Source: Iphione sp. A-MEVVRFRX5 (lineage: Eukaryota). Taken from it: a stretch of DNA of 64,000 nt. Below, piece by piece: positions 792 to 43,645 of the stretch (its first letter is position 1; each line of letters starts with the position of its first letter). Below the pieces are notes generated by a model. That model was not told the DNA's origin. It made no database searches and saw only the letters and a list, made by a program, of their open reading frames with translations. Made by a program: the position numbers and the translations under genes. The DNA is taken from positions 27,776,001 to 27,840,000 of the forward strand of contig OZ320322.1 of the NCBI GenBank assembly GCA_976226885.1. Reading direction: 5' to 3'.

Positions 792-1445
792 CACCGACTG
801 GCCGTGGAGGGTCGCTGTTGGGGTCAATGAGGCCCTCCTCTATGAGGTATTGCCTGTACGCTTCATACAGCTGCACATCGTCTACCACGAACTGACCGTA
901 CTTCTCGTACTTCATGTCCGTGTTGGCGCGTCCGATGTAGAGCAGCTTATTGTAATCGTAGATGCCCGTGTACGGCTGGCGCGCGCCACTGCGTGCCACC
1001 TCTTGGTTGTTGGCGTACATGATCAGTCCGTGGTCGGGGTGCCATGTCCACTCCAGCAGGTTCCAGTCGGAGTGGTCAAAGGCTCCGGAGGACACCCTCC
1101 ACACGTGCTCTGGGGTGCGGAATTCGGCCCAGATCTTACCGTCCCGGTAGTAAATGTCATACTCCGTGCTGGAGAACAAGTACATATTGTCTACGAGGTT
1201 CTTGGGCTTGACGCGTGACCTCAGTGTGAATCCTTGCCTGCAGGTGGCCAGATTGCCAGAGCACGAGGTATTCTTACCGGCATTTATGAACTGATTGACT
1301 CCGTCGAGGCCCACTGCATTGCCGATCCAGCCCTGGACATTGGTGGGGCGGTTAAGGGCATAGATATAATGACCACGGTGCTTGTTTTCGTGAACGATTG
1401 TGTTACCTGTTATATGGTCCATGTCAATAATATCTTTTTTAATAT
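792..1445 (-). CDS. Exon: whole domain D8 (DIKKDIIDMD...CSGNLATC...LIDPNSDPPRPVG)
   Basis: Acceptor cctttctttcag|AT ATT and donor GGT G|gtaagc; 654 nt, phase 1 to 1. Confidence 0.93.
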
Positions 1446-1874
1446 CTGAAAGAAAGGTCACCATATAATATGAATTTCGACCACATCATTTCATTTTGGT
1501 TTATAAAAAGATTCGTTCGATTCTCGCTTTAAGCATATATTTTGCTGACCTTAGTCTACGACAAAGAAAGGTTCCGTGCAAACTCAAACGATCCAACATA
1601 TGAACACTTGTTTTAGAACATGTTCTCTCAACGTAAGCATTGTTATTGATCAACAGGTTACAAACAAACCTAGAGTTAATCTACAGATGTATTGATTATG
1701 TGCAATCAAGAGGAATGGTTTATCATGGTTTAGTCAGGTGTGGAGTGCACGTGTGTTTATGTGTTTCTGGACAGCAACAATGTGGCTTGTACTAGACATT
1801 CTATAGAACTGGAGGTGGATGGATTTGTTTTGGATAGGGTTTCGGTTTCCCTTTTCACTTTCAGGAGCTCTTAC

Positions 1875-2525
1875 CAGCAGGTGGCGGGTCGGGGTCAGTG
1901 TCAGGGTTGATTAATCCATCCTTGACAAGGTAGTCTCTCCACGCCTCCCACAGCTGCACGTCGTCCACAGTGAACTGAGCATAGCTCCTTCCCGTGGTAT
2001 CAATGTTGGAACGACCGATGTAGAAGGGCATGTTGTAATTGTAGCTGCGGCGGTTGGTCGTGGGGTTCCTGTCTTGTGCTACCAAGCGCCCGTTGACGTA
2101 CATCTTTAGGCCCTTGGTCGGGTGCCAGGTGTGCTCCAATAGGTTCCAGTTCTGCCTCTGGAAGGCCGCTGTGGACACCGTCCACGTCTTGGTGGGCGTG
2201 TGGAACTCACACCACAGCTTACCGTTTCTGTAGTACACGTCGTACATGTTGCTCGAGTAAAGGTACTGGCCCTCCTGTAGGTTTTTCCCCAGCACCCTTG
2301 AGCGCAGGGTGAAGCCGTGGTGACAGTTGTCCAGGCTGCCATCGCACGAGGAGTTCCCTCCCACGTTGATGTACTGGTTTACACCGTCCAACCTGACGGC
2401 CCCATTGATCCAACCGCGAGTAACCGACGGCCGGTTGAACACGCGGACATAGTGACCCTGGTGCTTATCGTGAGCTACACGATCGCCCACAATACGGTCC
2501 ATATCTATAATGTCTCTTCTTACAT
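1875..2525 (-). CDS. Exon: whole domain D7 (DVRRDIIDMD...CDGSLDNC...LINPDTDPDPPPA)
   Basis: Acceptor cacctctttcag|AT GTA and donor GCT G|gtaaga; 651 nt, phase 1 to 1. Confidence 0.93.
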
Positions 2526-3829
2526 CTGAAAGAGGTGCGAAGAGACAAGGAAAACATGATAGGTCCCAAAACAAGCGAATATTCGGGAAAACAATTGGTT
2601 ATTGAGAAAAATTAAGGAGGAAAAAAACCACAGAGGCCAAACAAGCCAATTGGAACTCTTAATTCTTTAAATACTAAATTAAGGTCCAGGAAGATGTTAC
2701 CTTTTAGGGTTACCATATAGAAATACTCTTTGATACAAAAGTTACTAGGCTACGATTTTTACATATAATTTCGATTCTATTGACTTTAACTATTGAGACG
2801 GACTGAAAATATAATGCGCGCAAATTGATCTTTTATTTTCATATGAAATGAAGCTTCAGCAGAAAGGTACTTCTGACCACCTATGGATTTGCTCAAATCG
2901 CATGCATCTCTAAAGCAAGCATCTCAACTGAAAACTCTCCCTATGCAATTATAACATTTACAATAGGATTTGGTGATCTCTATCCGCCGAAATAGTACAG
3001 TGTATATGGCAACAGTAACTACTGTTTGCCAAAAGCAGTTTCGAGAGTAATACCTGAACGTGGCACGTGTCGTCCAGGACGAAATTATATGGTCACTTTT
3101 TCGACCAATTCGAAAGGGGATTTACAGGCGTCATGTATTTTTATAGAACATTATATTCTAATGGAGCATTCATACGTGCACGTGTGCATACATAATTATA
3201 TAGACGAGCTATAATAGACTTTTTTTGGTAATGACGTTTTCTAAAAGGGAAAATCTCATGCCTAAAAGAAAAAAAAACATTCGCTGTTATCTTACTCCTC
3301 AAAATGCGGCGAAATGTTTGGATGGTATACTTTCATTGGAAAGCCTATAAGATCTTGGATGCGTTAGTGGCGCAAAAGCAAGAGGCAGCCATTAATGACA
3401 AGCAAGAAGAAAGACCCAGCAATAAAAAGGAAAGTAAATCAAAAGGGAAAGCAACTGAATCGATAACGAGCCCAACACCACAACGTATCAGCCACCGTAG
3501 AATTCAACACCTCGAGTGATACAGACACCAGCAGAAACCGAGCAGGAGGAGCAGGGAAAAAAGAGCAAGGCAGTGTTTATCGCGTGAAGTGTCGACGTCA
3601 AATATTGTGAAACTGGCAGGCAATGGAAATAGTAACGATAAAAAAAGACATAAAAATTGTATTATTGACATAGCTAATAATGTGGCGGCACATCTACGCT
3701 GGTCGCAGGCAGTGGCGCCTCCCGTGGTTATTTTTTTTGTTTTTATATACAACGAGTGCATTGATCAAGAAGCGTAGGCGAAGTCATGCACGGACCCCAT
3801 CACGTGGTGGTGGTGGTTGCCGGCCTTAC

Positions 3830-4477
3830 CGCCAGGGGAGGGTTCCTCGTCCGGGTCAATTAGCCGGTTGTCGATAAGAATGTCGCGGTAGGCCTCCCAC
3901 AGCTGCACGTCGTCGACGGTAAAGCGACCGTAGCGCTCGCGCCGCATGTCGGTGTTGGCTCGCCCGACATAGAAGTTCTTCTGCGCGCTGTACGCGCCCC
4001 GGTTGATACTGATAGCCGTGTCGCGAGCCAACTCCTTCCCGTTCACGTACATGTACAGACCCTTCGTCGGGTGCCAGGACCACTCCATGAGGCTCCAGGT
4101 GTCCAGCGGGAAGGCGTTCGACGACACGGACCACTTGTGCGTGGGCGTGCGGAAATCGGCCCAGATTTTGCCGTTCCGGTAGTAGATATCGTAGGCGGCG
4201 CTAGAGAAGAGGTACATGCCCTCCTGAAGCTGGTTGGGCTTAATGCGCGCACGCAGGGTGAAGCCATTGTAACAGCGATCTAGGTTGCCGCGACAGGAGC
4301 AGTTGGGTCCCCCGTTGATGTACTGGTTGATGCCGTTGAGCTGGATGGCACCCCTGATCCAGCCTCGCACCACGTTCGGGCTGTTCATGGCATACACATT
4401 GTGGCCCTGGTGACGATCGTGTTCGACTAGATTGCCAGCAAGGATCTGGTCCATATCAATAATGTCGTGCTTCACAT
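3830..4477 (-). CDS. Exon: whole domain D6 (VKHDIIDMD...CRGNLDRC...LIDPDEEPSPG)
   Basis: Acceptor aatgtcccag|AT GTG and donor GGC G|gtaagg; 648 nt, phase 1 to 1. Confidence 0.92.
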
Positions 4478-5279
4478 CTGGGACATTGCAACGCGCGTTT
4501 GCGGGGCGCCAGATGAGAAGGATCCAGGCCATGGAGAACGAGAAAAAAATAGAACACAAACATGCATTTTGTTCTCTGTCACAATCTACGACATGCATAA
4601 GCATAGGATACAATTATTCCAACTTTAGCACAGGCGCAGCTGCTTTGCCACCCCAAACCGACACTAGGGTGAACTAAAAATGTAATGACAGGCTAGTGGC
4701 GCGGGATGAACTTAAATCAAACGGGCACAAGTTAGGAAACAATATATACATGTTTCCTGATCTTCACTTAACAGCTGCAAAAAAGCAAAGGTAGCGTATA
4801 ACAATGGTTCATTGTATGCCATACAATTGGAATCAATATGACCGTTTTGCTATATATATATGCCTTGAGTCGTCCAAGGTCACTGAAAGAAATGTGAAAA
4901 AGATTTTACACCCAAGTTCACCTGAAGAACATGCGATATGGGAGATACATCAATACTTAACGAAATGTGCATAAAAATGTTCCATCTCATATTGCTTCTT
5001 CACCTAATGTGTACTCAATCCGAGGCATGATCACACTGGGTACCTTCCTGAAACATTGGGGGCGGATAATAGTGTACGGCGAAGTAGCCTTGTTTCCTTG
5101 ACCGTCTTCACCTACTGAGCAATTTTTTTTGGCCTAGAATGCGTTGATTTCGCTCTGAAATAAAAGAAGAAATCCTTAACATCTTTCCTGTCACGCTTCA
5201 GATCTTCTCGGCATAACCGGTATACACGAGCTACCTATGTAACTTCATACTTCTCATTCAAGTGTGCCTTTCTGGTTCT

Positions 5280-5400
5280 ATTTGTCCGTCAGTCCGTTTG
5301 TCCTATTGTCTGTCTGTTCGTGTGTATCTAGTCGTCTCTATCCCTGCAGGTTGTCTGTGCTTGTGCGCGCCTGCCTGTTTGTTTGTCTGTCTGTCTGTAG
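5280..5400. repeat. Degenerate (GTCT)n / (GTTT)n simple repeat in an intron
   Basis: gtctgtct and gtttgtttgtctgtctgtct runs. Confidence 0.7.
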
Positions 5401-5524
5401 CTCTCTATTTCTTCTCATTTTAGTAGCGACTGCGTGTGCCCGTACACAACAAGACAGACATTGAGCTGCCACGTCCAGGTCACACCCACCCTAGAAGCAC
5501 AGTACACAAAGGTGGTCTACTCAC

Positions 5525-5814
5525 GGCTCTGCCACAGGTCGATGAAGTCCTTGTGCGCGTACCACAGTTCCATCTCGTCGATGATGGCGTTAGCGTAGGC
5601 GCCGTTGGTGATGTCCTCGTTGGGCCGGCCCAGGTAGACGGTCCAGTCACTGATGTCCCGCTCCGCATGCGCAGTGGGCGAGCGGTCTTGGCTCACTTCC
5701 CGCCCGTTGATGTACATCTGTAAACCCCGCTGCTCGTGCCATGTTAGTTCCACGTTCTGCCACTGATTGGCGCGGAACAAGGAACTCGAGCATGTCCAGG
5801 TCTTACCGCCCATG
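5525..5814 (-). CDS. Exon: C-terminal part of domain D5 (MGGKTWTC...ELTWHEQRGLQMYING...YLGRPN...IIDEMELW)
   Basis: Acceptor tatctgcag|C ATG and donor AGC C|gtgagt; 290 nt, phase 2 to 1. Confidence 0.9.
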
Positions 5815-6066
5815 CTGCAGATAGATCAGCATGCATTTTGAAAATGTTACAACGTGATTAACGTAATGTAATTTCATGTACATGTACTTGTTTCTTTAAT
5901 ATTCAGCGTGGTTTACAGTATATAAAAATAGTGATTTTATAACGTTAGCAAGCATTTTGGTACTTTAAGACCATTTATGGCCCTATCAACATAACATATT
6001 TTCTAGTCAATTTTAATGACGAAATATAAGGTCATCAATCATACAGCATTATCGGTGCACACTCAC

Positions 6067-6281
6067 CTGAATTTAGCATACAGCCGGCCATTGCTGTAGT
6101 ACATTGAGTAGGGGCCTGAAGAGAGGAAGTACTGGTTATCCCTGAGGTCTTTTGGGAAGATTTGCATCTTCATGGTTATGCCGTGCGGGCACTTTTCTAG
6201 GTTACCAAAGCAGTCAGTTTGGTGGTTACCCATCGTAGTGTACTGGTCGAGTGCTGCATTCATGTCCACTCCGTTGCCAAC
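6067..6281 (-). CDS. Exon: middle part of domain D5 (VGNGVDMN...DCFGNLEKCPHG...LYAKFS)
   Basis: Acceptor cacatgcag|GTT and donor TTC AG|gtgagt; 215 nt, phase 0 to 2; C-x6-C motif. Confidence 0.9.
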
Positions 6282-6662
6282 CTGCATGTGAATTTTTACC
6301 ATAAATTAGAGTTTCACGTACGTCCCGTCCTAACATTATGCCAGGTATATCAAATCATTTGGGGAACCCTGCAGTCCTTCTAGTGCAATGGATATAAGAT
6401 ATCTAGTTATTAGATTTTAACTAGCACAGACTGGCGAAAGTTAAAGTGGCCGTTATCAATATATGTATGAAAATCCAGCACCATCGCCTCCATTCCAACC
6501 TAATTTCTATACATCAATTGAGTTCTCGATTGTGATGTCCATAACCTTCACCCAGACTCCAAAATTAGACAAGATAATTGACTCGAGACTGAACGTACTT
6601 GTAGCTGAGTAGATATCATGTTCAATTCCATATGATACAAAGGTCTCCCTAAAGCCGCCTAC

Positions 6663-6772
6663 CTTGGCTGGTTCCAACTTGGCACCGTTATAAACCAGAA
6701 TACGGAACAACGGGTGACGAATCTCGTTGTCATGCTGTACTTCAAATGGAATGTAAATATGTTCGACCTCCT
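6663..6772 (-). CDS. Exon: first part of domain D5 (EEVEHIYIPFEVQHDNEIRHPLFRILVYNGAKLEPAK)
   Basis: Acceptor gtccttttcag|AG and donor AAG|gtaggc; 110 nt, phase 1 to 0. HPLFRILVYNGAKLEP aligns with D4 HPSIRVDVYGNARLVP. Confidence 0.85.
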
Positions 6773-7386
6773 CTGAAAAGGACATCAGTAGTCTATGTGA
6801 ACTTCCTGTAAATTATACACGCTTATGTTTATTATGCATTTATAATGTTCTAGTACAAGACTATAGAATTTTATAAAACAAACTGTACATTTTAAAATGT
6901 ATAACATGAAACCTGTAAAACGCAGTGCGCATGTATTGAACATTTGCTTTTTAAAAGTCTTAGAATGTCTATCAGTATACATGTATTTCTTTAATAATTA
7001 TACATCTATTCCTTAGAAGTCCATACCAGTTTTAGGAGGGTAACTGCATTCAAACATTTAAAGCATGTTTCCCTTTTCACCATTTTTGTATACATGATGG
7101 TAATGTTTTACAATCGCCTTGAAACATGGAAGCCTGAAGAGACCTTACGGTAATTATTGTGGAGGAAGGCACTTGAGCACACGTTTGCAGGTAGCGAATG
7201 GTGAAATACTATAGGATTGATGAAATTTGTATTTCCATCCAACGAATGATATGTGACGAAACGATCATAACTTCTAATCCCAAGGCTTATAGGGGAACCT
7301 CAGGCTATATCCCTGAACTGAAACGGAGATCAACTGTACCTACTGGGGTTAGCCTTCTGCCGCCACCAGGTGGGGGGGGGACCTAC

Positions 7387-8028
7387 CTCTATCAATATAA
7401 CTGAAAGCAATGAGATCATCACGACGACCTTCCCACATTTCAAACTCATCCACAACAAAGTCGCCATAAGCATAGGCCATGTTCCCGGAAAACCCTGCAT
7501 TGGCTCGTCCCAGGTACACGTGACCAGCGGTATTTGGTGGCATCACTTCCGGTATCATCCTACCGACGGCGTCGCTGGCGACGGCCTCATCGTCGATATA
7601 GACGGCGAGGCCGCCCTGGCGATGCCAGGTGAACTCCAGTAAGTGCCACACATTGAGGGTTAGAGGCGGCAGGTCGGTGGCCCAGTGACGACCCGGTAGG
7701 GTGCAGGTGAGCCTCAGACGGCCGTCCTTGTAGAAGAGATTGGCGCCGTTCGAACCAGTCGAGAGATAGTGCATATTCTCGGCGAACATGGGGAAGCGCA
7801 CCCACAAGGCGCCGGTGACGCCCCGCCGACACAGCAGCAGATTGCCCAGGCAGCTGTCGTTGTGGTCACCCAGGTCCAGGTACTGACTCTCACCGTCCAG
7901 GTATAATGCCTGGGCCACCATGCCTGGCACCAGACGAGCGTTGCCGTACACGTCAACTCGGATTGACGGATGTAGCACGCGACCGTTTTCTATGGAGTCC
8001 ATGGCGAAGAGATAGCGGGTTGGCCGGC
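7387..8028 (-). CDS. Exon: whole domain D4 (GRPTRYLFAMDS...CLGNLLLC...SYIDR)
   Basis: Acceptor tatacgtcag|GC CGG and donor AGA G|gtaggt; 642 nt, phase 1 to 1. Confidence 0.93.
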
Positions 8029-8720
8029 CTGACGTATACAGAACATGCCTTTTTACAGCAGAGACACGGTATGTACAACACGACATGAGGCCTTAGTCGT
8101 CCCTTAGTTGAATTTATCTATCAGAAGGATTCTTTCAGTGGTTGGGGTCGGTGACCAGTATGCGTTTTCGGAATGAATCCAGTAATGCATTTGAACACCG
8201 CTTCATCATCGCTGATAGAAACAAAACTATTTTCCCATGAGAGAAACTATCATTGCCCTGTCCACATCATCTCAGCTTTTCGCGTTAGACTATTAAGTAG
8301 ATAATATGTGCTTATATCTTGTTGAGATTCCATACAGGGTAAAGGGCTTTGTGTCGACATTCTTATCGAAGTTATTTACATATATATTTCAGCTGAGATT
8401 TTCCGGCATGTAGTCGAAACGAGTATCAAAGGAATTTATAGAAGGACCTAAAATGTCTATTGTCCCCCGCCTGCTGTTCAGCCAACTGAAACTAATTGCA
8501 ATACACAAATCTTATCTCCAGAATACCTAAAATCCCACAAAAATAATCCATTTACATGTATCGATGAAGGGAAGAATAACATGCAAAAATCAGTCCATTT
8601 GGCTATAGGTTATTGAAGTTATAACATCAAAGGTGCCGATTCTGCTCTCTCTAATATGGACTTCTTGCATGGAATACCATTTATTTTCACTTTTCATGCA
8701 AGAACACCATGGTAAGGGTT

Positions 8721-9075
8721 GGGAGTTAGCTCAGTTGGTAAGAGTGCTGAATAGCACTGGTCCACTGATTGAGAGACAGATCGAAATCCTGGGCCTGGGA
8801 TCTTTAATCATGACCAGATGGATCTACTATGGCCTCAACCCAGAGTAGTCCATAACTTGTAACAAAGACTGCGGGTGTATAGGATTCTGTCTCCTCTGTA
8901 CAAAAAGACCCCAGAAACCTATTCAAAATAAGAGTAGGCGGTAACTCCGGGTATTCTGGTCTCTCAATTCTGGATAATACATTGTAGTATGCCACTGCAG
9001 GAGGATATGGAAGAACAGCTAAAATGCTAGCTGAATATCTAGTCCCTGGTTAAAGATACAATGAAATGAAAATGG
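8721..9075 (+). mobile_element. tRNA-derived SINE, copy 1 (intron between D3 and D4)
   Basis: Head gggagttagctcagttggtaagag (A box) with a degraded B box; colinear over ~350 bp with 48939-49291; tail of (TGAAA)n type. Confidence 0.85.
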
Positions 9076-10931
9076 AAAAAAACCACAAGGTTGTGACGTA
9101 AGGTCAGATGGTCGACCAGTAGTATTCATAGGTTCCCCGATCTCTATGAGGCGGGGAACAATAACGTAGTCTAGCTTAGATTCTAGCTATAGCCAAACAA
9201 ATTCGATCATCGTAGAAATAACCTTCCCGTCTCTCATGGGAAAAAGTTGCCTCCCACAGTGTAGTTTTCGGCGTTTCATTTTGTAAACATTCCTATCAGT
9301 GTGTGGCATGTGGTGCATTCTTAAATTTATGTAAAGGCCTTACCCTAGCAGCTGTAAGGAAACTTGAGTTAGTCACAGAATTGAAAAGGGAAGCAGGAAT
9401 CAACTTCATCCTTACTTTTCATTTATCATGCCTTAGCGGGAGATGATGATATACATTTGCGTGCCGTACAAGCAGTGGATGCAGCGTTATAACAGCATAT
9501 AACCCTTATCAAATCAGAAGTCGCTGAGTAACTACTTGAAAGTGCTATCAGCGCATCTTAAATCTATTTGGTGGTAAGGAAAAAGGCATTTTCGAAAGCG
9601 GTTGAGGTAAAACATATAGGGGCATAACCTTACCAGATGAATTTAATAGGTTGATATGAATATGGGATTAGTATATCTTGTTTGAATGCTGGTTGCTGAG
9701 TCTCTATCGTTGGTATTGCCTTACAACAACCCAACCATTTAATTCTCCTCTCTATCTCGGATCTAATTTGCTCAAAATCTGGGAACACAAGAGAAAGTCA
9801 GGTTATAAAGTCACTTTCAGTCACAAGGACAGAATTAATATAAAAGCGCCCGAGCTCTAGACCCATTCCTCCTTTAGATATTTGGACTATAAGACCTAGG
9901 CAAACATCCATACTGCATCCCTTCGAAATCCTTCAGACCCGCTCTTAGGCGGGGTGGGCCTAAACAGGCGGAGGGCCAAGCTTCCAAAATGAAAGAGGAT
10001 TTTTGGCAAAGAGGTCACCTGTAGGTTTCTCCATTACCTAAGTACTTGTTTATAGTTGATAAATAAACTGTTTGACATTTAATTTCTTGGGAATGAATGT
10101 TAGCTTCATGCTTCCCTTCCTCATGCTCACACACAATGTCAATATACTAGTGCACGTACTCAAGCTTGTGCTATGCAATAATAAACCGACCCATGGTATT
10201 AATATTTATAAACACGTCTTATTTATACTATTAGTAACGTGCTGAAAATGTGTCCATAAATAATAACTAAACTTAAAATATAAAAGAACAAATACAAAGA
10301 AAATTTCAAAAACGATTTTGTGCTCTATGTACACGGTGCATATTTTTATACAGAGGGGCAATGATAGGTTGACAAACAAAAATGATTATTAGTAAATATT
10401 AGTAGGGCTCTTCTCTACTCACGCCATTAGTTCATTCTACGTTTAGTAGAATCCCAGGGGGATGAAATGTATGTACAAGTCAGGATTAGATTTAGGAGGT
10501 GCTTTCCTGCATGCCGCTTTATGTTACTGTGCCTGAGTATGGTATACATGTATTTGAAATGGAGTAAAATATTTACAAAACGTTTTCACCAAACCAGCAC
10601 TACACCGTAGGAGTATCGAAGGAGGGAGGGGGGAATCCCGTGTGGTGTTGTCCTATGCTGGAAAGAAATTCTACTGACTGTATGTACATCATTGATAGAT
10701 AGTGGCCTACGTAGGTGCCGCCGATGTCTTGTGAGGATAGTTGTTGCAGTGGCAGTGTGTTGGCAGTATGTCTTGCTCTTAGCAGAAACACTGAAAACAA
10801 AACGCCTGTACATGGGTATTGCCTTATATGCGGCAAATCATTTGCAGCTCATAGTATATGCGGGTGGGCTTTCAAGCTAAGGATTTCAGATCTAGAGGTC
10901 CTAGGAGGAGGCTGTCTTGACATTAATTTAC

Positions 10932-11561
10932 CTCGATCCAGGTAACCAAACGCTGTCAAATAGTCCCTATCGACGTAGTAATAAGCCAATTCGTCGAGGG
11001 TGACATTAGAGGTCACGTTCACCACGTCCGGTGTCTCTCCCCGGGCCAGGTACACACCGTTCAGTTTCTTTTGGTATGTGGTCTCCCTCGGTAGCTTTTC
11101 GTTGCTGGTAGCCACTAGCAGTTGGTTCACATACATGGCGATGCCCTTGTCAGGGTGCCAGGAATATTCCACAAAGTACCAGGTCTCGGGGTCGATCTTG
11201 GAGTAGCTCACCCTCCATTGGCGCGTGGAAGTTGCGAAGGAGCAGGTGAGGTTGCCGTCCTCGTACCACATCTTGAGACCGTTCTGGCCTGTAGACATGT
11301 ACTGCCTGCCGTCCTCCAGACTACTGAAACGCACCCACGTGGCGAGCAGGACTCCGAAAGGACAGTAATCCAGGTTTCCCAGGCAGGACTCACGGTGCTC
11401 GCCCAGACTGGCGTACTGACTTGGTTGCATGAACTCGACGGCACCGTTCACTTGGCCCTTCACAACTTGAGGACTGCCCGTCAAGTACATTGAATACTCA
11501 GGGTGGCCGATAGTGGCACCATCTATCGCTTCCATGGGGAACTCATAGCCTGCTGGTCGAC
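10932..11561 (-). CDS. Exon: whole domain D3 (GRPAGYEFPMEA...CLGNLDYC...GYLDRG)
   Basis: Acceptor gcatgcag|GT CGA and donor CGA G|gtaaat; 630 nt, phase 1 to 1. Confidence 0.93.
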
Positions 11562-12598
11562 CTGCATGCGTTATTCACAAATGCTTCGTCAAAACTCACA
11601 CAAGTACTAAGGATAACTCAGGTAGCCCAAACAATGCTACACTCATACAGGGCGGATTTTGGGATAATGTATCTTTGCTCTTCTGATAAATTTATTTCCA
11701 TTCAGGCCCCGCGACTACATATACATATTTAACGAAAATTATACTCTTACTTCATATTACAATCATTCATAAAAATTGCAATAATAATGCAGGTTTCTAT
11801 GGGAAACTTTACCATCCCATAACTCATTTCAATGGACCTATCCCCTATATACTACATGTCATGTGCATAGATGACCTAGTTACAGGCACCCTCAACATTC
11901 CATTGACACCTTAAATGCTATACCTGTCCACTGCTGTAGTTCTGTAAATTCTTCACAGAAAGCTCGCATACCTTGACAAAATAATCCAATATACCTTTGG
12001 TACACATGACCAAAACCATGTCTCCTTACCTATTGTAGTTATAGAGATATGGCTTGAAAAAGAACATTCTCTTTCTTCAAGTCTCTCGTCTCTGTCACAT
12101 GCAGAATGTTTGTTGAGGGAGCCTTTTCATACCCTATGTACCGACTGGCTGTCACTAAAACAGGCCAAGCCCCTTGAAAGAGCAAAACGTGTTGTTGCAT
12201 CGTGCTTTGGGGATGGTTCCATTTACATTCCGACCCATTAACAGAAATATGGCCAGTCTTTAATGTATTCTTGCAGAAACATTCAAAACTACAAACTCTC
12301 CCATAATACAAAAAGTAAACGAGTTCAAGGAGTGGACATAGGCCTACCACAGTGAAATGTTCATGGTGCATCTGCGGGGCCCGCAGATATATACGCTGTC
12401 ATGACCCTTGGCTTTCCTAACGAAATGAAATTGGCAAGTAGAAACGTAAAAGGACATACTACCTTTAAAGGGTAAATAACAAACGCATGGTCCATACAGA
12501 CCTTTGTGCACGTGTCGCCTCTGCTAGTTCCAAGATTTCTATAGTGTCATAATGGTCCAGGGTCTCTGGCTAGACCCGCCGGACCTGACATGACCTAC

Positions 12599-13222
12599 CT
12601 CTGTTGATGAGTCCGAGCGCCAGAGCGCGCGGTCGGTCGACGTATTGGATCTCCACCTCGTCGATGTAGGCCTGTGCATACTTCTCCTCGACCATTGCCG
12701 TGTTGGCGCGGCCAATGTAGAAACGCGACGTTCCCGGCTGGGGACGCCGCATCTCGTAAGTGGCGTCGTGCGCCACCTGCTGGAGATTGGCGTACAGGCG
12801 CGCACCGTCCTCGGGGCTCCACGAGATCTCGAGGAAATACCACGTGTTGCGGACGAAGTCGGGCCACTCCACCTGCCAGTGCTTGTTGCCCTGCTGCAAC
12901 TCTGCAATCAGCTTGTCCTCCTTGTAGTAGACGCGCACGCCGCGCCCACCCGAGTCCAGGTAGTACATGTTGTCCTGGACGTGGAACGAATTGACCCAGA
13001 AGGCGAGCGACAGGCCGTAGTTGCAGCGCTGCAGGTCGCCCAGACAAGCCGAGCCCACGTCGCCGCCGTCAACGTACTCCATGCGGCCATCGAGGCGCAA
13101 TGCGCGGCCCACCTTGCCGCGGATCAGACTCGGGTTACCGTAGATGGTGGCCGTCGTCTTCGAGTCGGGCAGCGACGTGCCTTCCAGCATCTCCATGGGG
13201 AAGTAATACCTAAAGATGGGGC
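12599..13222 (-). CDS. Exon: whole domain D2 (GPIFRYYFPMEML...CLGDLQRC...GLINRG)
   Basis: Acceptor ctcctctcccaccccag|GC and donor AGA G|gtaggt; 624 nt, phase 1 to 1. Confidence 0.93.
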
Positions 13223-13625
13223 CTGGGGTGGGAGAGGAGCAAGTATGTGAGTAAGGCGTGTGCTGTTGCTTGTCGCTATGCTATGTGCACGCATTTATAT
13301 TTATCATAAATTTCAATCATTTGTTGCGACATAAAGCTGTTTTTCATACATGTACATGTATCTGTATAAAAAGGGCTGTTATTTAAGTCGATATGAATAA
13401 TTCATACCTATCTCATACCTATCTGTACCAACCCTGAACACGTAACGGGTAGCGTTTTGTCGAACGCACAAAATACTCCTGCAATCTATATAATTCTTAC
13501 TGGAATGGTGTACAAGGGAAAAAAGAGGTCTGTTAAAATGCAGAATGCTGCTTTTATCACTATAAAATAAGTAAAACATATCCGAGGATTCTTCCTAATA
13601 ACATGGAGGATTCAGTTGCCCTCAC

Positions 13626-14090
13626 CTATTTGTCTGAGTTGCTGTTGACCCCTGTGTGACGACCAGAAGTTTAACTTGTCCATGGCGACGCTCGAGTGCG
13701 CCTGTCTACGCGAGCGTCGTCGATCGCTGCTTCGGCCGTCGTCATTGGGTCGTCCCAGTAAGAACGAGCCAAACTCGTCCTGGTTGGCTTGCGCTGGCGT
13801 CGTCATTTCCGGGTCGGGGTCATGGTCGGCGAGGACGCCGTCGACGTAAAGGCTGAGCCCCTGGCGGATTTCCCAGGTCGCCGCCAGGTGGTACCATCGA
13901 CCTGGAAGTACCTCGTCACTGTGCGCGCGCCACTCCTCACCGTTTTTCCGGCGGAAGCGGAACTCCAGTCTGCCTTTGTTGTAGATCATGGCGACGCCAT
14001 GGGATTTGTTCGTGTGGCCGCCGTTCGAGAGGAAGACCTCCTCGCCGTCTACAGGGTGCTCAAAATTCACCCAGAGGGCAATAGTATAAC
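13626..14090 (-). CDS. Exon: C-terminal part of domain D1 (GYTIALWVNF...GRWYHLAATWEIRQGLSLYVDG...LLGRPN...RRRSRR...)
   Basis: Acceptor gtcgttttag|GT TAT and donor ATA G|gtgagg; 465 nt, phase 1 to 1; continues the D1 fold in frame. Confidence 0.92.
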
Positions 14091-14956
14091 CTAAAACGAC
14101 ACAATATAGAGAGGCAGAGGTTATCGTGAGAGAAAAGACCCTGGCAACTAGATGTGTCTCATACGTTTAAATGTGTGTCCACTTTACGTACATACATATC
14201 ACAGAAAATTCAAACACCTAATGTAAAGGCATTTTTCTCCACTGGAAATATAAATGTTAAGAATACCTCCGCCTAAATATCCATCTATCCATCCAAATAT
14301 AGACATGTACATACGTATACATAGTACGCATATTAAACAGACAGGCGGGCAGAAACAAACAGACAGAAAATTATATGAAAAATAACACCAGCGAACGGTC
14401 ACTCTTCTCAAAATCTATGGCTCTTTGGTATTTCTACCTCACCAAATCTATCTGCTGCGACTTTCAAGTATTTGTATTGTACACATTGTGTAACTGGCAT
14501 GTAGGACATGTCCTATCTTCCGGGTGTAGTTATGTTGATCTCTGTATCCAGAGTCTACATAACATCACCTTCAAGAAAAATTGGAGCAGGATAACTCGTG
14601 CTATACTGAATTTACATTATAACCAACTTGCACTTTGAGCAACTTCGACCTTTCCGCCTCACCACGTGTCACATTTTAAGCCATATCTCCTTCTCTCTCG
14701 ATTTCTCTCTGTCTATCTCTAACGAAAGGAAACGTCTTCAGTCATATTCGAGCGATTTCCTCATCTAGAAAAATGGTATTTATGGTACATGTAATTCTTT
14801 TTCAAACGTGGTTTTTGTGGAGGTCTGATCTAACTAGACGGATGACCCCTTAGGATCATCTACACTTGTAATTTGTTTTTGGCAGACATATTTATCGCTT
14901 GTGTCATAAAAAATCATTTACACGAATATATGCACAAGAAAAAACGGCGTATGTAG

Positions 14957-15088
14957 GTAGCTGTACGAGTTGGTCATGAAGCAAGTTGTCCATGGCATAG
15001 TTAGCTGTTTGAGTTGGTCATGAGCCAAGTTGGCCATAGCATAGTCAGCTGTATGAGTTGGTCATGAGGCAAGTCGCCATGCCATGAG
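14957..15088. repeat. Minisatellite, 3 x ~44 bp
   Basis: Unit approximately TAGCTGTAYGAGTTGGTCATGAGGCAAGTTGGCCATRGCATAG, in the intron splitting D1. Confidence 0.9.
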
Positions 15089-15301
15089 TAACTCATTCTC
15101 ACCATTTGTATTTAGGTATATTAAAGAAAATACTGCAATGGTGACCTTCAGGATAGGTTGGCCTAACGTCAACCCTGATGACTTTTGAGTAGTATTTGTA
15201 GCTGATCTATTGGTCCCTATTATCTGTCGCCGTGAGATTAAGATCATAAACACTACGGGTTTCTTCCAACAGGTTTCAGCCTATTAACTTGAGAATTCGA
15301 C

Positions 15302-15330
15302 CTGTGTACCTGATACTGTGTACCTGATAC
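15302..15330. repeat. Short tandem duplication (ctgtgtacctgata x2)
   Basis: Read directly from sequence. Confidence 0.8.
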
Positions 15331-15754
15331 TAACGTGAGGGTCCGCTACAAGTGGAAAATAATATTTAAAAAAAGAAGCAATCATGTTCATGAAAAAAAA
15401 AACAACACCAAACAGCTACAGCTACACACCTACTTATGGCTCCTGGGGTTCGTTACCCTGCTGCTAAACAGCAAGAGGTCAGGAAAAAAATACTTAATAT
15501 TCTTTCCCCTGACATTGTAGTCTAGGGGTAGATAATTGGATTCGTGCGAGAGCAGTCTGACCAGGGAAGTTGATGCTCTGACGCTGTATACTGTTTGGAA
15601 AAGTATCGACTAATCAACTCTTACAAAGTACAATCCCTTTGGTGATTTGCTTGTAATTTGGATTTAAAAATAACTTTTCATTTTTGTTTCTTTACATGGT
15701 CCTATATACATGTATATCTTTTGATGGTACTCAACTAATAGTGACAATGAGGAC

Positions 15755-15962
15755 CAGTTGGGAGGGGAGCAGTTATTTTAGTGAAGTACCGCCAACTATT
15801 ATTGGCCTTCTGATTTATGTGCTGGATGCTCTTCTACAGTTACTGCTGATCGGTTACCAAAGAATTAATTCTTGGTGAAGTGTATCTGCCTTGTTCTCTA
15901 TCGTTGGTGAAGCGTTATCTGAATTCTTATAGTGAAGCGTTATTGCATATGCCCTGACACTT
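15755..15962. mobile_element. Degraded second copy of the 34944-35164 MITE family
   Basis: Same GTGAAGCGTTA repeats, and the end gtgaagcgttattgcatatgccctgac parallels gtgatacgttattgggtaccccctgac; TIRs eroded, boundaries approximate. Confidence 0.5.
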
Positions 15963-16053
15963 CCCCTTCCCCCTCCCATCCTGTGTGAGGTGCTTAGATC
16001 ACTTCACATTCATACACTCTTCAGATTTCACTGAGGACATGGTTGCCACTCAC

Positions 16054-16269
16054 CGCGGGGGCATTTGTCGAGGTCGCCGAAGCATTCTTGCCGATGGCTG
16101 GGCCCGCTCACCGTCACGTACTGCTCGGGCGTGTGAAGGCGGATGGCGTTGCCCTCGACGCCCGGGATGAGCGTAGGCGCCCCGACGGCGGTGGCATCCA
16201 GGCCGGACGGGTTGACCACCGCCGTGCCCGACAAGATGTCCATCGGCAGCTCGTAGTGGGTGGCGTCAT
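16054..16269 (-). CDS. Exon: N-terminal part of domain D1 (DDATHYELPMDILSG...ECFGDLDKCPRG)
   Basis: Acceptor ttccttccaccag|ATG ACG and donor CGC G|gtgagt; 216 nt, phase 1 to 1; contains the C-x6-C motif. Confidence 0.9.
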
Positions 16270-19200
16270 CTGGTGGAAGGAACGAGAACTAAGTCGTTAG
16301 CATTGGTTCCGATGCGTGACTAGTTGTTGACGGATGACCAGAACACAAACAAGTTGGTAACAGCAGCAAGTACCATCATGGGCGCATTAATACGGTTTAG
16401 CATTAATTAGAAAGAACAGACAGACAGACAAATAACAACAAAGACAGTGTAAAGAGAAGGAGGAAGGGGGAGAGGGGAGAGAGAGTGAGAGAGAAGGAGA
16501 GAGAGAAGTAGGTGGGAGAACAAGAGAGACTGATCATTGAGGAACACTGGAGTATCTGCTACAGCAGGCGAACATCAGCACGAACACAATAGCCTTTTCT
16601 TGCGAGCTAACAACCAGCTTTCCTGACAACGACAGACTTGTTTCCTGCTGGAAGGGGGTCAGCCTCATCAAAATATCAACCAAACCGATCTTTCCATAGA
16701 CCTATCCCAACACGACTGCAAGGGCTATTTGATTAGGCTTAGGTTCAACAGAAGGCTATTCATATACCTGTTGTAATAATTATGACGTTGCGACCAGCAA
16801 CGTTAAGAAAGCTCTATAAGCTACACTGGATAAATCATCTTGTCTTCAGTGGGGTTCGGAAAGGTTCCCCTGAGGGACTAAGCCTTCACGTGTCAGGTTT
16901 CTGTAGATAATGACCATCATTTCTAAAGGTCGCTTGTAACTCTGTTTGAGGATACTGATGGAGTGCATGCCTCACCAGAGAAAGGTAATTGTGGCAGTCT
17001 ACCACGCCTCTTGCATCCATACGTCTCATTTGGTATATAGTTGAGGAGTCTTGGAGCCATTCCATAGTGGATTTCTCCTGCTCCAGCATCCCATACATAG
17101 ATTTCCCCTTCTCCCCCTTCCTTGATGTTTCTTTTAGTGAATAATTGCAGAAACGGTTGGTATGATTCTAATGCTTGGGCCCACCTATACTTTCCCAGCT
17201 GGTGGTTGGAGATAGAAGCAAAGTAAGGGGATTCCCGTCATGCAGGAGTACGGCAACATTCTGTCGGGAGCTGTACGTTGCAGTTACTAACTGCACTTGT
17301 TCGCTGACACATCATGTCAGACCGCCGGAGTACTTCATATTTTACTGAAAAACGTTCTTGTAAGGTCACTGCACATCCATTGGGGGCCCCACAGAAGTAT
17401 TCCGTTAGGGGCCTCACAAAAGCATTCCCTATACATGTACATGTACGTTGTTCTCCCCTGGTGTATCTATTCCTCCTGGAGAAGTAAATATGAACGAACA
17501 ATATTTCAGTGAGAGATGCAACACAAAGTAAGCTGTGTTGTGTGTGAGTTCCAAAGAGATCCATTTAACAGTTTGACAAATATTCCCTAAAATCCTTATT
17601 GTTTGACCATTCTCTCTCCTATACCTCCTCAGGACCAAGAGCCATTTTGTTTATGTGCAATAAGGTGGTGATAAGTATCCAGGAAATTCCTAGATGAATC
17701 AATGATAACTGTTCTAAAAGTGGCATTTTGGCCACAAATAAGAAATACTGGTTCGATGGATCATGTGTAAACTTAAACAAAAATACTTTTCACTGTTTAT
17801 GTAGAGCCTGACACCGTAAAGAGAACTTGACTAAGCTATAGCTCCAGGCACACGAAAATATGGTTATAGGAAAAAAGATCGCAGCCTAATACATGTGATA
17901 CTGGGCTTCAGCTAGGGGTGGATAGAAGTCAATAGCAGTTGTAAAAAGCAGAAATTACCGTCTGTATATAATGGTAATATCTCACCCAAGGTCAAGCCAA
18001 CATCTATTCCGAATACATGTATTCTGAATGTACAGGTCTGTGTATTTCTGCAACACTAGAATATTATTTGGTCCACTTACAGGTCGCTCGCAAATGAAAC
18101 GTTACTGTTTTAGAATGAACAGTATGCAACCAGGAAGAAAAACAACTCCGTGACCTTAGCGGAATATAAGTCCGCTAAATTCTTTTCATTTGGTAACATA
18201 ATGCATTATGTTATACAGTCTAGCTCGACATGTCTGTGTCCCTTTCTGCCAGCTGTGCTAGCAGCATTCCTTTTCGCAGGTTTACAGTGGAAACACTTAC
18301 CAACCGTGCCATCCTAACACTAAAGGAATAGATCTCGTTTTCGTCAGAATATGTCCCATACTTTGGAAGACTTTTTACAAGGCATTGCACAATAGAGTCT
18401 TTCGTCAGCATTAAAAAAATACCATGAAAAATCTGGTAATTTATGAACTTGTATTATAAACAACTGGGAAAGGCTCATGTGTATCCCATCATCTGGAGGA
18501 AGGACCACTAGAGCTCTTTGCTCAGGGAGAGCACCTGTGGCTACCTCTCAAAGCCCAAGGGCAGAGAGAGTGTTTTTCTCATGTCAGTCCGCGGTCTTGA
18601 ATTATGAATGACACAAAGTAAACTTGCTTGCGTATGACAATTAAAAAACACATCACGGCTGAAAGGGAAGTTTTCGGGAATTATATTTTAGTGAAGGCCA
18701 ATTGCAATTAAACGAAATCGCGTCCGTTACAGTTTGCGAACGTCAACTCATGATACAGAACACTTCTCAATGTACAACAGGTGGCCCGTGGTACGGTCTG
18801 GGATGTTGGGGGTGGGGTAATTGGCCTGCTAGCTTTTTATTCTAGACGTCGTTGTTGCAACACTGGCGGACTCCCGTCGATTGGAACCAGTCGGTATATA
18901 GTTAAAAACAAGAATAAAAGAGCTTGCAGGAGGACTGACTCCCAGTGTACCCCCGTGATATTTTGTTCGCCGTCATAACTGTCTCATGTGAGTGCTTACA
19001 GTGAACTTGGTCGAACACTTAACTGGATCCCGAAACAACAAAATTCCAAACTTGTTGTACGTATTGGGTAATATGATCAAGGAGATAAGGTTAGGATGTT
19101 TGTATATTTGAGAACGAACTAAAAGTAAAACTCTCTTCCTTTAAGAGCGAGGCAAAATCACTCGTCCTTTTTGACCTGTCAGTTATTGTCTGTCTTTCTC

Positions 19201-30527: not shown

Positions 30528-30612
30528 CCCCATCACCGTTCGCATCCTTCAACCTCCGGCGGCTCGGAAGAGGAACGAGTGGAGGGGTGTCTGTCTTATG
30601 TTCACCAACTGC
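30528..30612 (-). CDS. Candidate upstream exon of the LamG-array gene (AVGEHKTDTPPLVPLPSRRRLKDANGDG)
   Basis: Acceptor tttttcactgtgtttccag| and donor GGG|gtaagt; 85 nt; the only open frame exits in phase 1, matching exon 16269. Could also be UTR or chance. Confidence 0.35.
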
Positions 30613-34943: not shown

Positions 34944-35164
34944 CAGGGGGGGTCACCTATTCTGGTAAAGCGTTATTAGCCTTTTTAATTCAACGCTTAT
35001 CGTTATTTGCCTCTTGATTTAAACGCTAAACGTTATTCAGTCGTGTTTGGTGAAGCGTTACCAATGATTTAATTATTGGTGAAGCATTATCTGCTGTTGT
35101 TTTAACCGTTATGGTCACTATGAATTCTTGGTGATACGTTATTGGGTACCCCCTGACCCCCCTG
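34944..35164. mobile_element. hAT-type MITE (~221 bp)
   Basis: TIRs CAGGGGGGGTCA and TGACCCCCCTG; flanking 8-mers agaagaga and tgaagaga (7/8 identical, hAT-length TSD); internal repeats of GGTGAAGCGTTA. Confidence 0.7.
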
Positions 35165-37595: not shown

Positions 37596-37814
37596 GGCAT
37601 TCACATACATACAGATATTTCCACGTCCGGACGCGGGTGCGGATGTCAAACTGTCTGGGATGGGTTTTGTCCTGACCCGGAGGTGGATTCCATAGAACAC
37701 AATGGTAAAAGACCTGCTATCCTTGTGGAAGCAATTAACAACCCTGTCAGCAGGGAGTATTATCTGCCCACGTCCGGGGACAGATTTTTGGTCCGGTTAT
37801 ATGTGAAAAGCGCC
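37596..37814. mobile_element. Possible PIF/Harbinger-like or TA-targeting MITE
   Basis: Imperfect TIRs ggcattcacata and tatgtgaaaagcgcc, with TA on each flank; internal direct repeat ccacgtccgg. Confidence 0.3.
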
Positions 37815-38116
37815 TAAGTCTAATACCATGCACATACTTATCTGTATGAACCATGCATATGAGTAGCTGCTACCACTTATATCTATGGAATTTACAATAA
37901 ACAATCTTTTCTTCATTGAACTTGTTTTTATCTTATTCCTGTAGAAGCAGCCTAATGATACGACTGCGTTACAAACCCGAGCTTAGGATTGTGTTTGAAT
38001 ACTAATCAGCCTCCGACTTTGGAACGCCAGTGGAAATGGATACGCTCCTGGCTGCTGTATCCCACCAACATCTGCAAATGTGTCCAAGTATGTGTTTATA
38101 CATGTATGTAGTGTGT

Positions 38117-38145
<29 letters not shown>
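38117..38145. repeat. (TG)n microsatellite
   Basis: Read directly from sequence. Confidence 0.95.
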
Positions 38146-38147
<2 letters not shown>

Positions 38148-43622: not shown

Positions 43623-43645
43623 TGTGTGTATGTATGTGTGTGTGC

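What the first reader, a model, noticed from the sequence alone, without database searches (positions are those of the whole stretch)
792..16269. Giant uncharacterised protein built from at least 8 tandem ConA/LamG-like domains
Seen: 1715 spliced codons made entirely of one ~210-aa repeat, with a conserved C-x6-C disulfide-like motif and W...W-H..G-L.-Y-V-N-G strands. Knowledge: this signature fits the LamG/pentraxin-like fold; the closest family I recall is the N-terminal domain of adhesion GPCR ADGRD1/GPR133, which has one copy. Inference: an 8-fold or larger array suggests a multivalent lectin-like adhesion, matrix, biomineral or immune-recognition protein. I cannot assign it to any named gene.
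Basis: partly seen in the sequence, partly recalled or inferred. Interest (0 to 1): 0.72.

Follow-up and report, generated by a model that had tools for sequence, protein, structure and literature searches.

The report
Neurexin-like PHRED-1 receptor, nine-lectin-domain array
The eight tandem lectin-like domains are real, but they are the middle of a roughly 94-kb gene for a neurexin-derived membrane receptor of the PHRED-1 family, which is already present (mostly unnamed) in molluscs, annelids and flatworms; the only unusual point is that this genome has nine such domains where its relatives have six.

Summary
Eleven minus-strand exons between 792 and 16269 sum to 5145 nt (1715 codons) and encode eight ~210-aa Laminin_G_3 (ConA-like) units. 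Each unit has the C-x6-C motif.

The array is not a stand-alone protein. It sits inside one gene of about 94 kb:
- Exon 1 lies about 6 kb past the window's end. It holds the start codon, a signal peptide, neurexin LNS1 and an EGF-like segment.
- A 53.5-kb intron fills window 16270-64000.
- After the array, left of the window, come a ninth unit, five classical LamG domains with two EGF-like segments (neurexin LNS2-6 plan), one transmembrane helix, a Gly/Ala/Gln-rich tail and WD40 repeats.

The whole gene is collinear with a 4148-aa Owenia fusiformis protein. It has the same domain composition as about 15 mollusc proteins. Its WD40 tail matches flatworm homologues of PHRED-1, a "divergent neurexin-1 homolog" needed for muscle-fibre organisation in planarians.

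All 16 annelid and mollusc long-form proteins checked have exactly six units; flatworm homologues have none. Here unit 6 has become four exons. No RNA data could be obtained, so inclusion of all nine units is inferred. I rate it a new variant of a known family, of modest interest.

The parts
16054..16269 (-). Exon A: N-terminal third of LamG_3 unit 1 (through the C-x6-C motif). Phase-1 acceptor, phase-1 donor.
   Evidence: Splice sites. 57% identical to Owenia P0158 residues 246-319. Unit profile E 7e-13.
13626..14090 (-). Exon B: remainder of LamG_3 unit 1.
   Evidence: Pfam PF13385 E 8.3e-11. 43.6% identical to Owenia residues 319-467. Groups with Owenia unit 1, support 99/95.
12599..13222 (-). 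Exon C: LamG_3 unit 2, a single phase 1-1 exon.
   Evidence: Pfam E 3.4e-12. AlphaFold2 pLDDT 97.1, pTM 0.92. VIA-align Z 19.4 to AbnA domain 4.
10932..11561 (-). Exon D: LamG_3 unit 3, a single phase 1-1 exon.
   Evidence: 39.6% identical to Owenia residues 677-893. Groups with Owenia unit 3, support 99/98. Below the Pfam threshold. Its E 6e-93 against the unit profile is self-recognition, because D was used to build that profile.
7387..8028 (-). Exon E: LamG_3 unit 4, a single phase 1-1 exon.
   Evidence: Pfam E 5e-10. Collinear with Owenia residues 886-1104.
6663..6772 (-). Exon F0: first 110 nt of LamG_3 unit 5 (phase-1 acceptor, phase-0 donor).
Evidence: Splice sites. Its sequence similarity alone is weak.
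6067..6281 (-). Exon F1: middle of unit 5, including the C-x6-C motif (phase 0 to phase 2).
   Evidence: Unit profile E 6e-18. 43% identical to Owenia unit 5, residues 1139-1209.
5525..5814 (-). Exon F2: C-terminal part of unit 5 (phase 2 to phase 1).
   Evidence: Pfam E 1.7e-8. 42% identical to Owenia residues 1214-1300.
3830..4477 (-). Exon G: first of four unit-6-type LamG_3 exons (648 nt, phase 1-1).
   Evidence: Pfam E 4.4e-9. 50-57% identical to H, I and J. The G-J clade is sister to Owenia unit 6, support 99/96.
1875..2525 (-). Exon H: second unit-6-type exon (651 nt, phase 1-1).
   Evidence: Pfam E 5.4e-10.
792..1445 (-). Exon I: third unit-6-type exon (654 nt, phase 1-1). The fourth, J, lies outside the window at G000:C22:27774322-27774963 (L013:8322-8963).
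   Evidence: 70% identical to fragment P0005 from another, unnamed species and groups with it, support 100/99. Its E 2.7e-96 against the unit profile is self-recognition, because I was used to build that profile.
16270..64000 (-). Most of intron 1 (53.5 kb in total). Exon 1 (start codon, signal peptide, LNS1, EGF-like segment) is at L015:5767-6559, which would be window positions 69767-70559.
   Evidence: Exon 1 was found. It has a phase-1 donor that matches exon A. It is 49.6% identical to Owenia residues 16-242. No unit or Pfam match was found in ORFs of this stretch, and no Rfam match.

Best explanation
The finding is the central ectodomain array of one large minus-strand gene (about C22:27752735-27846559, roughly 94 kb). 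The gene encodes a type-I membrane receptor of the lophotrochozoan PHRED-1 family, a neurexin-derived protein.

Deduced order of parts:
1. Signal peptide.
2. LNS1 and an EGF-like segment.
3. Nine Laminin_G_3 (ConA-like jelly-roll) units.
4. A Thr/Pro-rich linker.
5. LNS2, LNS3, EGF, LNS4, LNS5, EGF, LNS6.
6. One transmembrane helix.
7. A Gly/Ala/Gln-rich cytoplasmic segment.
8. WD40 repeats.

In other words, the alpha-neurexin ectodomain plan carries a LamG_3 array inserted between EGF1 and LNS2. The neurexin tail is replaced by a WD40 module.

Units 1-5 are one-to-one orthologues of units 1-5 of the annelid and mollusc proteins. Unit 6 has been multiplied into four exons (G, H, I, J).

Inferred mechanism (not shown): the array is an elongated extracellular stalk that presents several non-equivalent lectin-like binding faces to matrix, glycan or protein ligands. 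The WD40 region recruits cytoplasmic partners. By analogy with planarian PHRED-1, it would then act as a cell-cell or cell-matrix organiser, possibly in muscle.

Because every single-exon unit is a symmetric phase-1 exon whose length is a multiple of three, skipping any of them keeps the reading frame. Array length may therefore vary by splicing.
For: - Exon structure and compatible splice phases run from exon 1 through the array, LamG/EGF exons, the TM exon and the WD40 exons.
- tblastn collinearity is unbroken with Owenia P0158 residues 16-4143, across L015, the window, L013, L011 and L014, all on the minus strand.
- Pfam: PF13385 on six in-window units. PF02210 on the downstream exons and exon 1. 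WD40 on L014 exons.
- Exon 1 aligns to neurexin-1alpha LNS1-EGF1 (chain residues 8-218, E 5e-76). A downstream exon aligns to the start of LNS3. Another aligns to LNS5 (E 1e-74).
- The TM segment has a Kyte-Doolittle mean of 2.05.
- The WD40 region is 35-39% identical to Schistosoma spindalis P0189. The PHRED-1 paper names Schistosoma homologues as family members (10.1101/131789).
- Sixteen annelid or mollusc long-form proteins were checked with the unit profile and each has exactly six units, at residues of about 250-1515. The database's precomputed Pfam lists give LamG_3, LamG and WD40 for all of them.
- Unit tree: positional orthology of units 1-5, and G-J as one clade sister to Owenia unit 6. 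Unit I has a specific orthologue in another species.
- Fold: pLDDT 97.1, ConA-like jelly roll.
Against: - There is no transcript evidence. No RNA run was listed for this organism. That it is one mRNA, and that all nine units are included, rests on splice phase and homology only.
- The planarian PHRED-1 sequence itself was not available. The link to it goes through flatworm homologues and the paper's stated defining architecture.
- Flatworm members lack the LamG_3 array, so the planarian function may not transfer to it.
- The EGF-like segment of exon 1 is not called by Pfam.
- No ligand, Ca2+ site or sugar-binding site was shown for any unit.
- The signal peptide was judged by eye. Its best hydrophobic window scores only 1.34.
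Confidence: 0.82

Rival explanations
1. The four unit-6-type exons (G, H, I, J) are alternative exons, either mutually exclusive or freely skipped. The mature protein would then keep the ancestral six units, and the locus would encode a small repertoire of isoforms rather than a nine-unit protein.
For: - All 16 annelid and mollusc long-form proteins checked have exactly six units.
- G-J are adjacent, of near-equal length (648, 651, 654 and 642 nt), in the same phase (1-1) and 50-57% identical. Together they are sister to a single Owenia unit 6.
- Two Owenia protein models differ by the presence of units 5-6. That is consistent with cassette use of unit exons.
Against: - All four lengths are multiples of three, so joint inclusion stays in frame.
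- The introns between them are 429-1828 nt, so there is no steric block.
- All sites are GT-AG.
- No docking-site or selector-like complementary elements were found.
- Units 1-6 of the relatives are themselves tandem exons that are all included in the gene models.
Confidence: 0.13
2. The array is a separate gene. It would be either a secreted multi-lectin protein or the extracellular part of an adhesion GPCR (ADGRD1-like), merely lying between unrelated neighbouring exons.
For: - The same LamG_3 subtype is found in an Acanthaster adhesion GPCR (P0013, which has GAIN, GPS and 7tm_2), in a Ptychodera EGF_CA/LamG_3 protein (P0019), and in VWD and F5/8-C proteins of molluscs.
Against: - No start codon with a signal peptide and no stop codon exists at either end of the array. 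Both ends are phase-1 splice sites.
- The flanks match, in order, the flanks of the six-unit array in Owenia.
- No GAIN, GPS or 7TM hit was found on any flanking exon tested.
- A profile search of the window and 40 kb to its left found no further units.
Confidence: 0.03
3. The extra unit-6 copies are decaying duplicates (pseudo-exons) without function.
For: They are lineage-specific additions to an otherwise fixed six-unit plan.
Against: - All four keep open frames, intact AG/GT sites and all 20 columns that are invariant in alignment A1 of seven units, including both cysteines and the three tryptophans.
- They have diverged to 50-57% identity without any stop.
- Unit I has a 70%-identical specific orthologue in another species, so the duplication is old and has been retained.
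Confidence: 0.02

Closest known systems
PHRED-1 (Schmidtea mediterranea; Adler and Sanchez Alvarado, bioRxiv 10.1101/131789) and its flatworm homologues (e.g. Schistosoma spindalis P0189)
   Same: Signal peptide, LamG and EGF ectodomain, single TM helix and a conserved intracellular C-terminal WD40 region. Family hits come only from lophotrochozoans. The WD40 exons here are 35-39% identical to Schistosoma.
   Different: Flatworm members have no LamG_3 units (0 found) and more EGF repeats (9 in PHRED-1). Muscle expression and the regeneration phenotype are known only for the planarian.
Owenia fusiformis unnamed proteins (P0158, 4148 aa; P0001 = CAH1790210.1, 3736 aa) and mollusc 'uncharacterized protein LOC...' (Mya arenaria LOC128241470, Ostrea edulis LOC125678424, Mytilus californianus LOC127717737 and others)
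   Same: Owenia is collinear with this gene end to end. The mollusc proteins share the same domain composition and the same unit positions. Units 1-5 are one-to-one orthologues; Owenia identities are 35-58%.
   Different: They carry six LamG_3 units; this gene has nine unit-coding exon sets, with unit 6 in four copies. Owenia instead has extra LNS5-like LamG copies.
Alpha-neurexin (NRXN1-alpha; PDB 3qcw, 3r05, 3poy)
   Same: The order of LNS and EGF modules. Exon 1 corresponds to LNS1-EGF1, and downstream exons to LNS3 and LNS5, with E down to 1e-74 to 5e-76.
   Different: A LamG_3 array lies between EGF1 and LNS2. The cytoplasmic tail is Gly/Ala/Gln-rich plus WD40 and is not the short neurexin tail. 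A separate canonical neurexin-like locus lies on contig C4 at about 88.46-88.77 Mb.
LamG_3/PTX-like modules of adhesion GPCRs
   Same: ConA-like jelly-roll module used in extracellular regions. Z 12.2 to 8b55. The Acanthaster receptor carries at least five tandem units of the same subtype.
   Different: There is no GAIN, GPS or 7TM here. This is a domain-level relation only.

Membership tests
PHRED-1 family (lophotrochozoan neurexin-like LamG/EGF/TM/WD40 receptors) | N-terminal signal sequence | tested here: met
   Exon 1 starts with Met, then a basic stretch, a hydrophobic core and a small-residue cleavage-type motif, followed directly by LNS1. This was judged by inspection and hydropathy only; no dedicated predictor was available.
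PHRED-1 family (lophotrochozoan neurexin-like LamG/EGF/TM/WD40 receptors) | Extracellular Laminin G and EGF-type modules | tested here: met
   PF02210 and PF00054 match exon 1 and four downstream exons. Cys-rich EGF-like exons align to the EGF segments of Owenia. Pfam itself does not call EGF on these short exons.
PHRED-1 family (lophotrochozoan neurexin-like LamG/EGF/TM/WD40 receptors) | Single transmembrane segment between ectodomain and tail | tested here: met
   There is one hydrophobic stretch in exon L011:2574-3489, with a 19-residue Kyte-Doolittle mean of 2.05.
PHRED-1 family (lophotrochozoan neurexin-like LamG/EGF/TM/WD40 receptors) | Conserved intracellular C-terminal WD40 repeats in the same protein | tested here: met
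   PF00400 matches L014:8444-8716 and L014:6735-7115. These exons are 42-58% identical to Owenia and 35-39% to Schistosoma spindalis over the same region. Splice phases from the TM exon onward are compatible (0-0-0). Being on one mRNA is inferred, not observed.
PHRED-1 family (lophotrochozoan neurexin-like LamG/EGF/TM/WD40 receptors) | Muscle expression and a role in muscle-fibre organisation | not testable with these tools
   No RNA run was listed. This function is known only from planarian RNAi (10.1101/131789).
Canonical neurexin | Alpha-neurexin order of LNS and EGF modules | tested here: met
   Exon 1 corresponds to LNS1-EGF1, L013:4477-4908 to the start of LNS3, and L011:7908-8621 to LNS5. 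There are five LamG and two EGF-like segments after the array.
Canonical neurexin | Uninterrupted LNS1-EGF1-LNS2 and a short conserved neurexin cytoplasmic tail | tested here: not met
   Nine LamG_3 units lie between EGF1 and LNS2. The tail is Gly/Ala/Gln-rich plus WD40. A separate neurexin-like locus exists on C4.
Pfam Laminin_G_3 (PF13385, ConA-like clan) | Profile match above the gathering score, and a ConA-like jelly-roll fold | tested here: met
   Six of eight in-window units score 35-47 bits against a cut-off of 27.6. Units D and I are below it but are 30-57% identical to their siblings. The model of unit 2 has pLDDT 97.1, with Z 19.4 to AbnA domain 4 and Z 12-14 to pentraxin and LamG domains.
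Adhesion GPCR (ADGRD1-like) | GAIN/GPS domain and a secretin-type 7TM after the extracellular modules | tested here: not met
   No PF16489, PF01825 or PF00002 match on any flanking exon tested. These families are absent from the 25 of 35 Pfam families listed for the collinear Owenia protein. Only one hydrophobic TM stretch was found.

The most novel reading that the evidence does not exclude
The four tandem unit-6 exons (G, H, I, J) might be used as alternative exons, possibly mutually exclusive. A neurexin-derived receptor would then keep its conserved six-unit array but swap the membrane-proximal lectin-like unit among four 50-57%-identical versions. That would be a small Dscam-like recognition repertoire in a lophotrochozoan adhesion receptor.
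Probability: 0.12. Interest if true: 0.6.

Novelty: new variant of a known kind. Interest (0 to 1): 0.36.

Why it matters
This turns an apparently orphan giant repeat protein into an identifiable gene: a PHRED-1-family, neurexin-derived receptor. It also records something the only functional paper on the family does not mention. Annelid and mollusc members carry a strictly conserved six-unit ConA-like array between EGF1 and LNS2, and flatworm members lack it. In this genome the last unit has expanded to four copies.

The strict position-by-position conservation of the units over a deep split suggests that each unit has its own role. That makes the array a reasonable target for ligand hunting in a family with one known muscle-organising member.

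It is not a new kind of system. Homologous proteins are already in public databases as uncharacterised entries.

Tried and rejected
- RNA evidence: the look-up of sequencing runs listed no run.
Its units group with the annelid Owenia.
- The bacterial promoter/terminator scan is irrelevant to an animal gene.
- Rfam found no match in the window.
- Earlier findings of this scan: nothing near this place or by words.
- ORFs inside intron 1 have no meaningful Pfam match. The only one is a GA-microsatellite artefact hitting DUF3915.
- A search for docking or selector-type complementary elements around G-I found only coding-sequence repeats and short, probably chance, inverted repeats. The intron stretch in front of J beyond the window start was not covered.
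- Sequence search of the unit profile against PDB gave only a bacterial S-layer-domain protein (E 1e-7) and sub-threshold hits. The match of the fold to the lectin-like subdomain of clostridial neurotoxins is a shared ConA-like fold, not a toxin relationship.
- Spliced (joined) models were deliberately not built or searched. Every search was exon by exon by reference, and split units entered alignments and trees as separate pieces.

Full report
**Observation**

The window is G000:C22:27776001-27840000 of a 1.18-Gb, 89-contig animal assembly. On the minus strand between 792 and 16269 there are eleven exons with canonical AG/GT sites: 16054-16269, 13626-14090, 12599-13222, 10932-11561, 7387-8028, 6663-6772, 6067-6281, 5525-5814, 3830-4477, 1875-2525 and 792-1445.

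The exons encode eight units of about 207-217 aa. Five units are single exons with phase-1 boundaries on both sides. Unit 1 is split in two exons and unit 5 in three.

- Pfam Laminin_G_3 (PF13385) is matched above its gathering score by six units, E 1.7e-8 to 3.4e-12.
- Units D and I fall below Pfam. Both were used to build the sibling-unit profile, so their E of about 1e-93 to 1e-96 against it is self-recognition. Their independent support is 30-57% identity to the other units.
- The ninth unit, which was not in the profile, matches it at E 1.6e-77.
- All units keep the C-x6-C pair and three tryptophans.
- The units are 30-36% identical to each other, except G, H, I and the outside unit J, which are 50-57% identical. 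There is no N in the window. This is real, old, in-frame repetition.

**The fold**

An AlphaFold2 model of unit 2, built with an 87-sequence alignment, has mean pLDDT 97.1 and pTM 0.92 and is an all-beta sandwich.

- Foldseek and an independent all-against-representatives alignment both give ConA-like jelly rolls. The best is Z 19.4 to the carbohydrate-binding domain 4 of arabinanase AbnA.
- Next come Z 15-18 to the lectin-like subdomain of clostridial neurotoxin and NTNH proteins.
- Then Z 12-14 to PTX3, sialidase CBM40 lectin domains, laminin, agrin and neurexin LG domains, and the ADGRG4 PTX-like domain.
- These are fold resemblances only. By sequence, PDB offers nothing close.

**The array is only part of a gene**

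Both ends of the array are phase-1 splice sites. Neither is a start or a stop.

To the left of the window:
- A ninth unit (J, L013:8322-8963, phase 1-1).
- A phase-1 exon that opens with a Thr/Pro-rich linker and runs into a classical Laminin G domain.
- Further LamG exons (PF02210) and two Cys-rich EGF-like exons.
- An exon with a single hydrophobic segment (Kyte-Doolittle 2.05) followed by Gly/Ala/Gln-rich sequence.
- After phase-0 junctions, four exons, two of which match Pfam WD40 and related beta-propeller models, and a stop at L014:6735.

To the right:
- A homologue-guided search of the whole genome found exon 1 about 6 kb beyond the window's end. It contains Met, a signal-peptide-like segment, a LamG domain and an EGF-like Cys-rich segment. 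It ends in a phase-1 donor that fits exon A.
- Window 16270-64000 is therefore most of a 53.5-kb first intron. I found nothing else coding or structured in it.

**Relatives**

A profile of seven units was searched against 1.84 billion representative proteins. It gave 4382 hits at E<=1e-3 and 126 at E<=1e-30.

The best hit is a 3736-aa Owenia fusiformis protein. It has LamG, LamG_3 and C-terminal WD40 domains.

I first read that WD40 part as a merged neighbouring gene. The literature corrected this. Planarian PHRED-1, "a divergent neurexin-1 homolog", is defined by exactly this combination: signal sequence, LamG and EGF ectodomain, TM, and intracellular WD40. Homologues are reported only in lophotrochozoans (Schistosoma, Lottia, Octopus, Capitella). 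The protein is expressed in muscle and is required for normal muscle-fibre, pharynx and intestine regeneration (10.1101/131789).

Searches with the C-terminal part of the Owenia protein returned the following:
- Full-length proteins from about 15 mollusc species. The database's precomputed Pfam lists give LamG_3, LamG and WD40 for them.
- Flatworm proteins (Schistosoma spindalis, Spirometra, Mesocestoides) listed with LamG, EGF and WD40.

The longer Owenia isoform (P0158, 4148 aa) is collinear with this locus from residue 16 to residue 4143. It runs across exon 1, all array exons, the LamG/EGF exons, the TM exon and the WD40 exons, at 29-58% identity. The Schistosoma protein matches the WD40 exons at 35-39%.

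In this genome the family's WD40 tail matches best at this locus. Two weak WD40-type hits lie elsewhere.

**Relation to neurexin**

- Exon 1 aligns best to neurexin-1alpha LNS1-EGF1 (chain residues 8-218, E 5e-76).
- One downstream exon aligns to the start of LNS3. Another aligns to LNS5 (E 1e-74).
- With five LamG and two EGF-like segments after the array, the ectodomain follows the alpha-neurexin plan, with the LamG_3 array inserted between EGF1 and LNS2.
- The tail is unlike neurexin's.
- A separate neurexin-like locus, with its own LNS1-EGF exon and widely spaced LamG exons, lies on contig C4.
- So the gene resembles alpha-neurexin in its ectodomain plan but is not the neurexin orthologue.

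**What is unusual here**

With the unit profile, all sixteen annelid and mollusc long-form proteins examined have exactly six units at the same place (residues of about 250-1515). Flatworm homologues and the short scallop paralogues have none.

A maximum-likelihood tree of units shows positional orthology. This gene's units 1-5 fall with units 1-5 of Owenia and the molluscs. Its G, H, I and J form one clade, sister to Owenia unit 6 (support 99/96). In a second tree, unit I pairs with a 70%-identical fragment from another unnamed species at 100/99. At least part of the expansion therefore predates this species and has been kept.

This genome's units group with Owenia rather than with molluscs. 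This hints at an annelid-like source, but the organism was not identified.

**Mechanism**

Shown:
- Domain composition and order.
- Fold of a unit.
- Intact frames and splice sites.
- Collinearity with full-length relatives.

Inferred:
- One mRNA.
- Type-I topology, with the array outside the cell and the WD40 region inside.
- The array as an extended multi-site binding region.
- Possible length variation by skipping of symmetric phase-1 exons. Two Owenia models differ by units 5-6.
- A cell-adhesion or organising role like PHRED-1.

The strict conservation of unit number and order argues that the units are not interchangeable spacers. No ligand or metal site was established.

**Rivals**

- G-J as alternative or mutually exclusive exons is the main live alternative (about 0.13). 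The fixed six-unit plan favours it. In-frame lengths, ordinary introns and the absence of selector-like elements argue against exclusivity.
- A stand-alone lectin gene, an adhesion GPCR, or decaying pseudo-exons are each poorly supported.

**Limits**

- No RNA run could be listed and read laying was not used.
- The planarian PHRED-1 sequence itself was not in reach.
All searches were exon by exon by reference.

**Verdict**

The gene is a PHRED-1-family, neurexin-derived receptor with an expanded (nine instead of six) LamG_3 array. It is a new variant of a known, little-studied family, of modest interest.

Noticed in passing
L016:4321-5127 (+) = G000:C4:88459321-88460127; further LamG exons at C4:88596347-88596988 and C4:88766767-88767384: A second, separate neurexin-like locus. 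Its first exon holds a signal peptide, LNS1 and a Pfam-called EGF. Its LamG exons are spread over more than 300 kb. It is probably the canonical neurexin of this genome.
   Followed up: partly
P0001 residues 1714-2712 (Owenia fusiformis): In Owenia, five consecutive LamG domains all match best to this gene's single LNS5-like exon (L011:7908-8621). Owenia has therefore amplified a classical LamG module, while this genome amplified LamG_3 unit 6.
   Followed up: partly
P0001 versus P0158 (Owenia fusiformis): Two protein models of the same Owenia gene differ by the presence of LamG_3 units 5 and 6. This is consistent with cassette use of the symmetric phase-1 unit exons.
   Followed up: no
P0178 and P0186 (Ylistrum balloti LOC132559439 and LOC132559438); P0183-P0185 (other scallops): Scallops have a long form with six LamG_3 units and a short paralogue of about 2626 aa with none. 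For both Ylistrum proteins the longest contig on record is 392,332 bp, and their LOC numbers are consecutive, so they are probably neighbours. UniRef names the Mizuhopecten short form 'Neurexin-1a'.
   Followed up: partly
P0013 (Acanthaster planci), P0019 (Ptychodera flava), P0010 and P0023 (Ylistrum, Haliotis), P0015, P0016: The same LamG_3 subtype is a mobile module in other marine-invertebrate surface proteins. It occurs in an adhesion GPCR with EGF_CA, GAIN, GPS and 7tm_2 (P0013), in an EGF_CA-rich protein with five tandem units (P0019), in VWD and F5/8-C proteins, in an SRCR/EGF protein, and in one model that begins with an amiloride-sensitive sodium channel segment.
   Followed up: partly
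window 14954-15085: A 44-nt tandem repeat (3 copies, 83% matches) in the intron between the two exons of unit 1.
   Followed up: no
window 43648-43718 and about 38100-38200: A GA microsatellite (36 copies) and a CA-type microsatellite inside intron 1. The GA run produces a spurious ORF that weakly hits DUF3915.
   Followed up: yes
G000:C11:58913040-58913492 (-) (L008): The only other place in the genome with a modest match to a LamG_3 unit of this gene (E 6.6e-7, 24% identity, open frame 327 aa). It was not examined.
   Followed up: no
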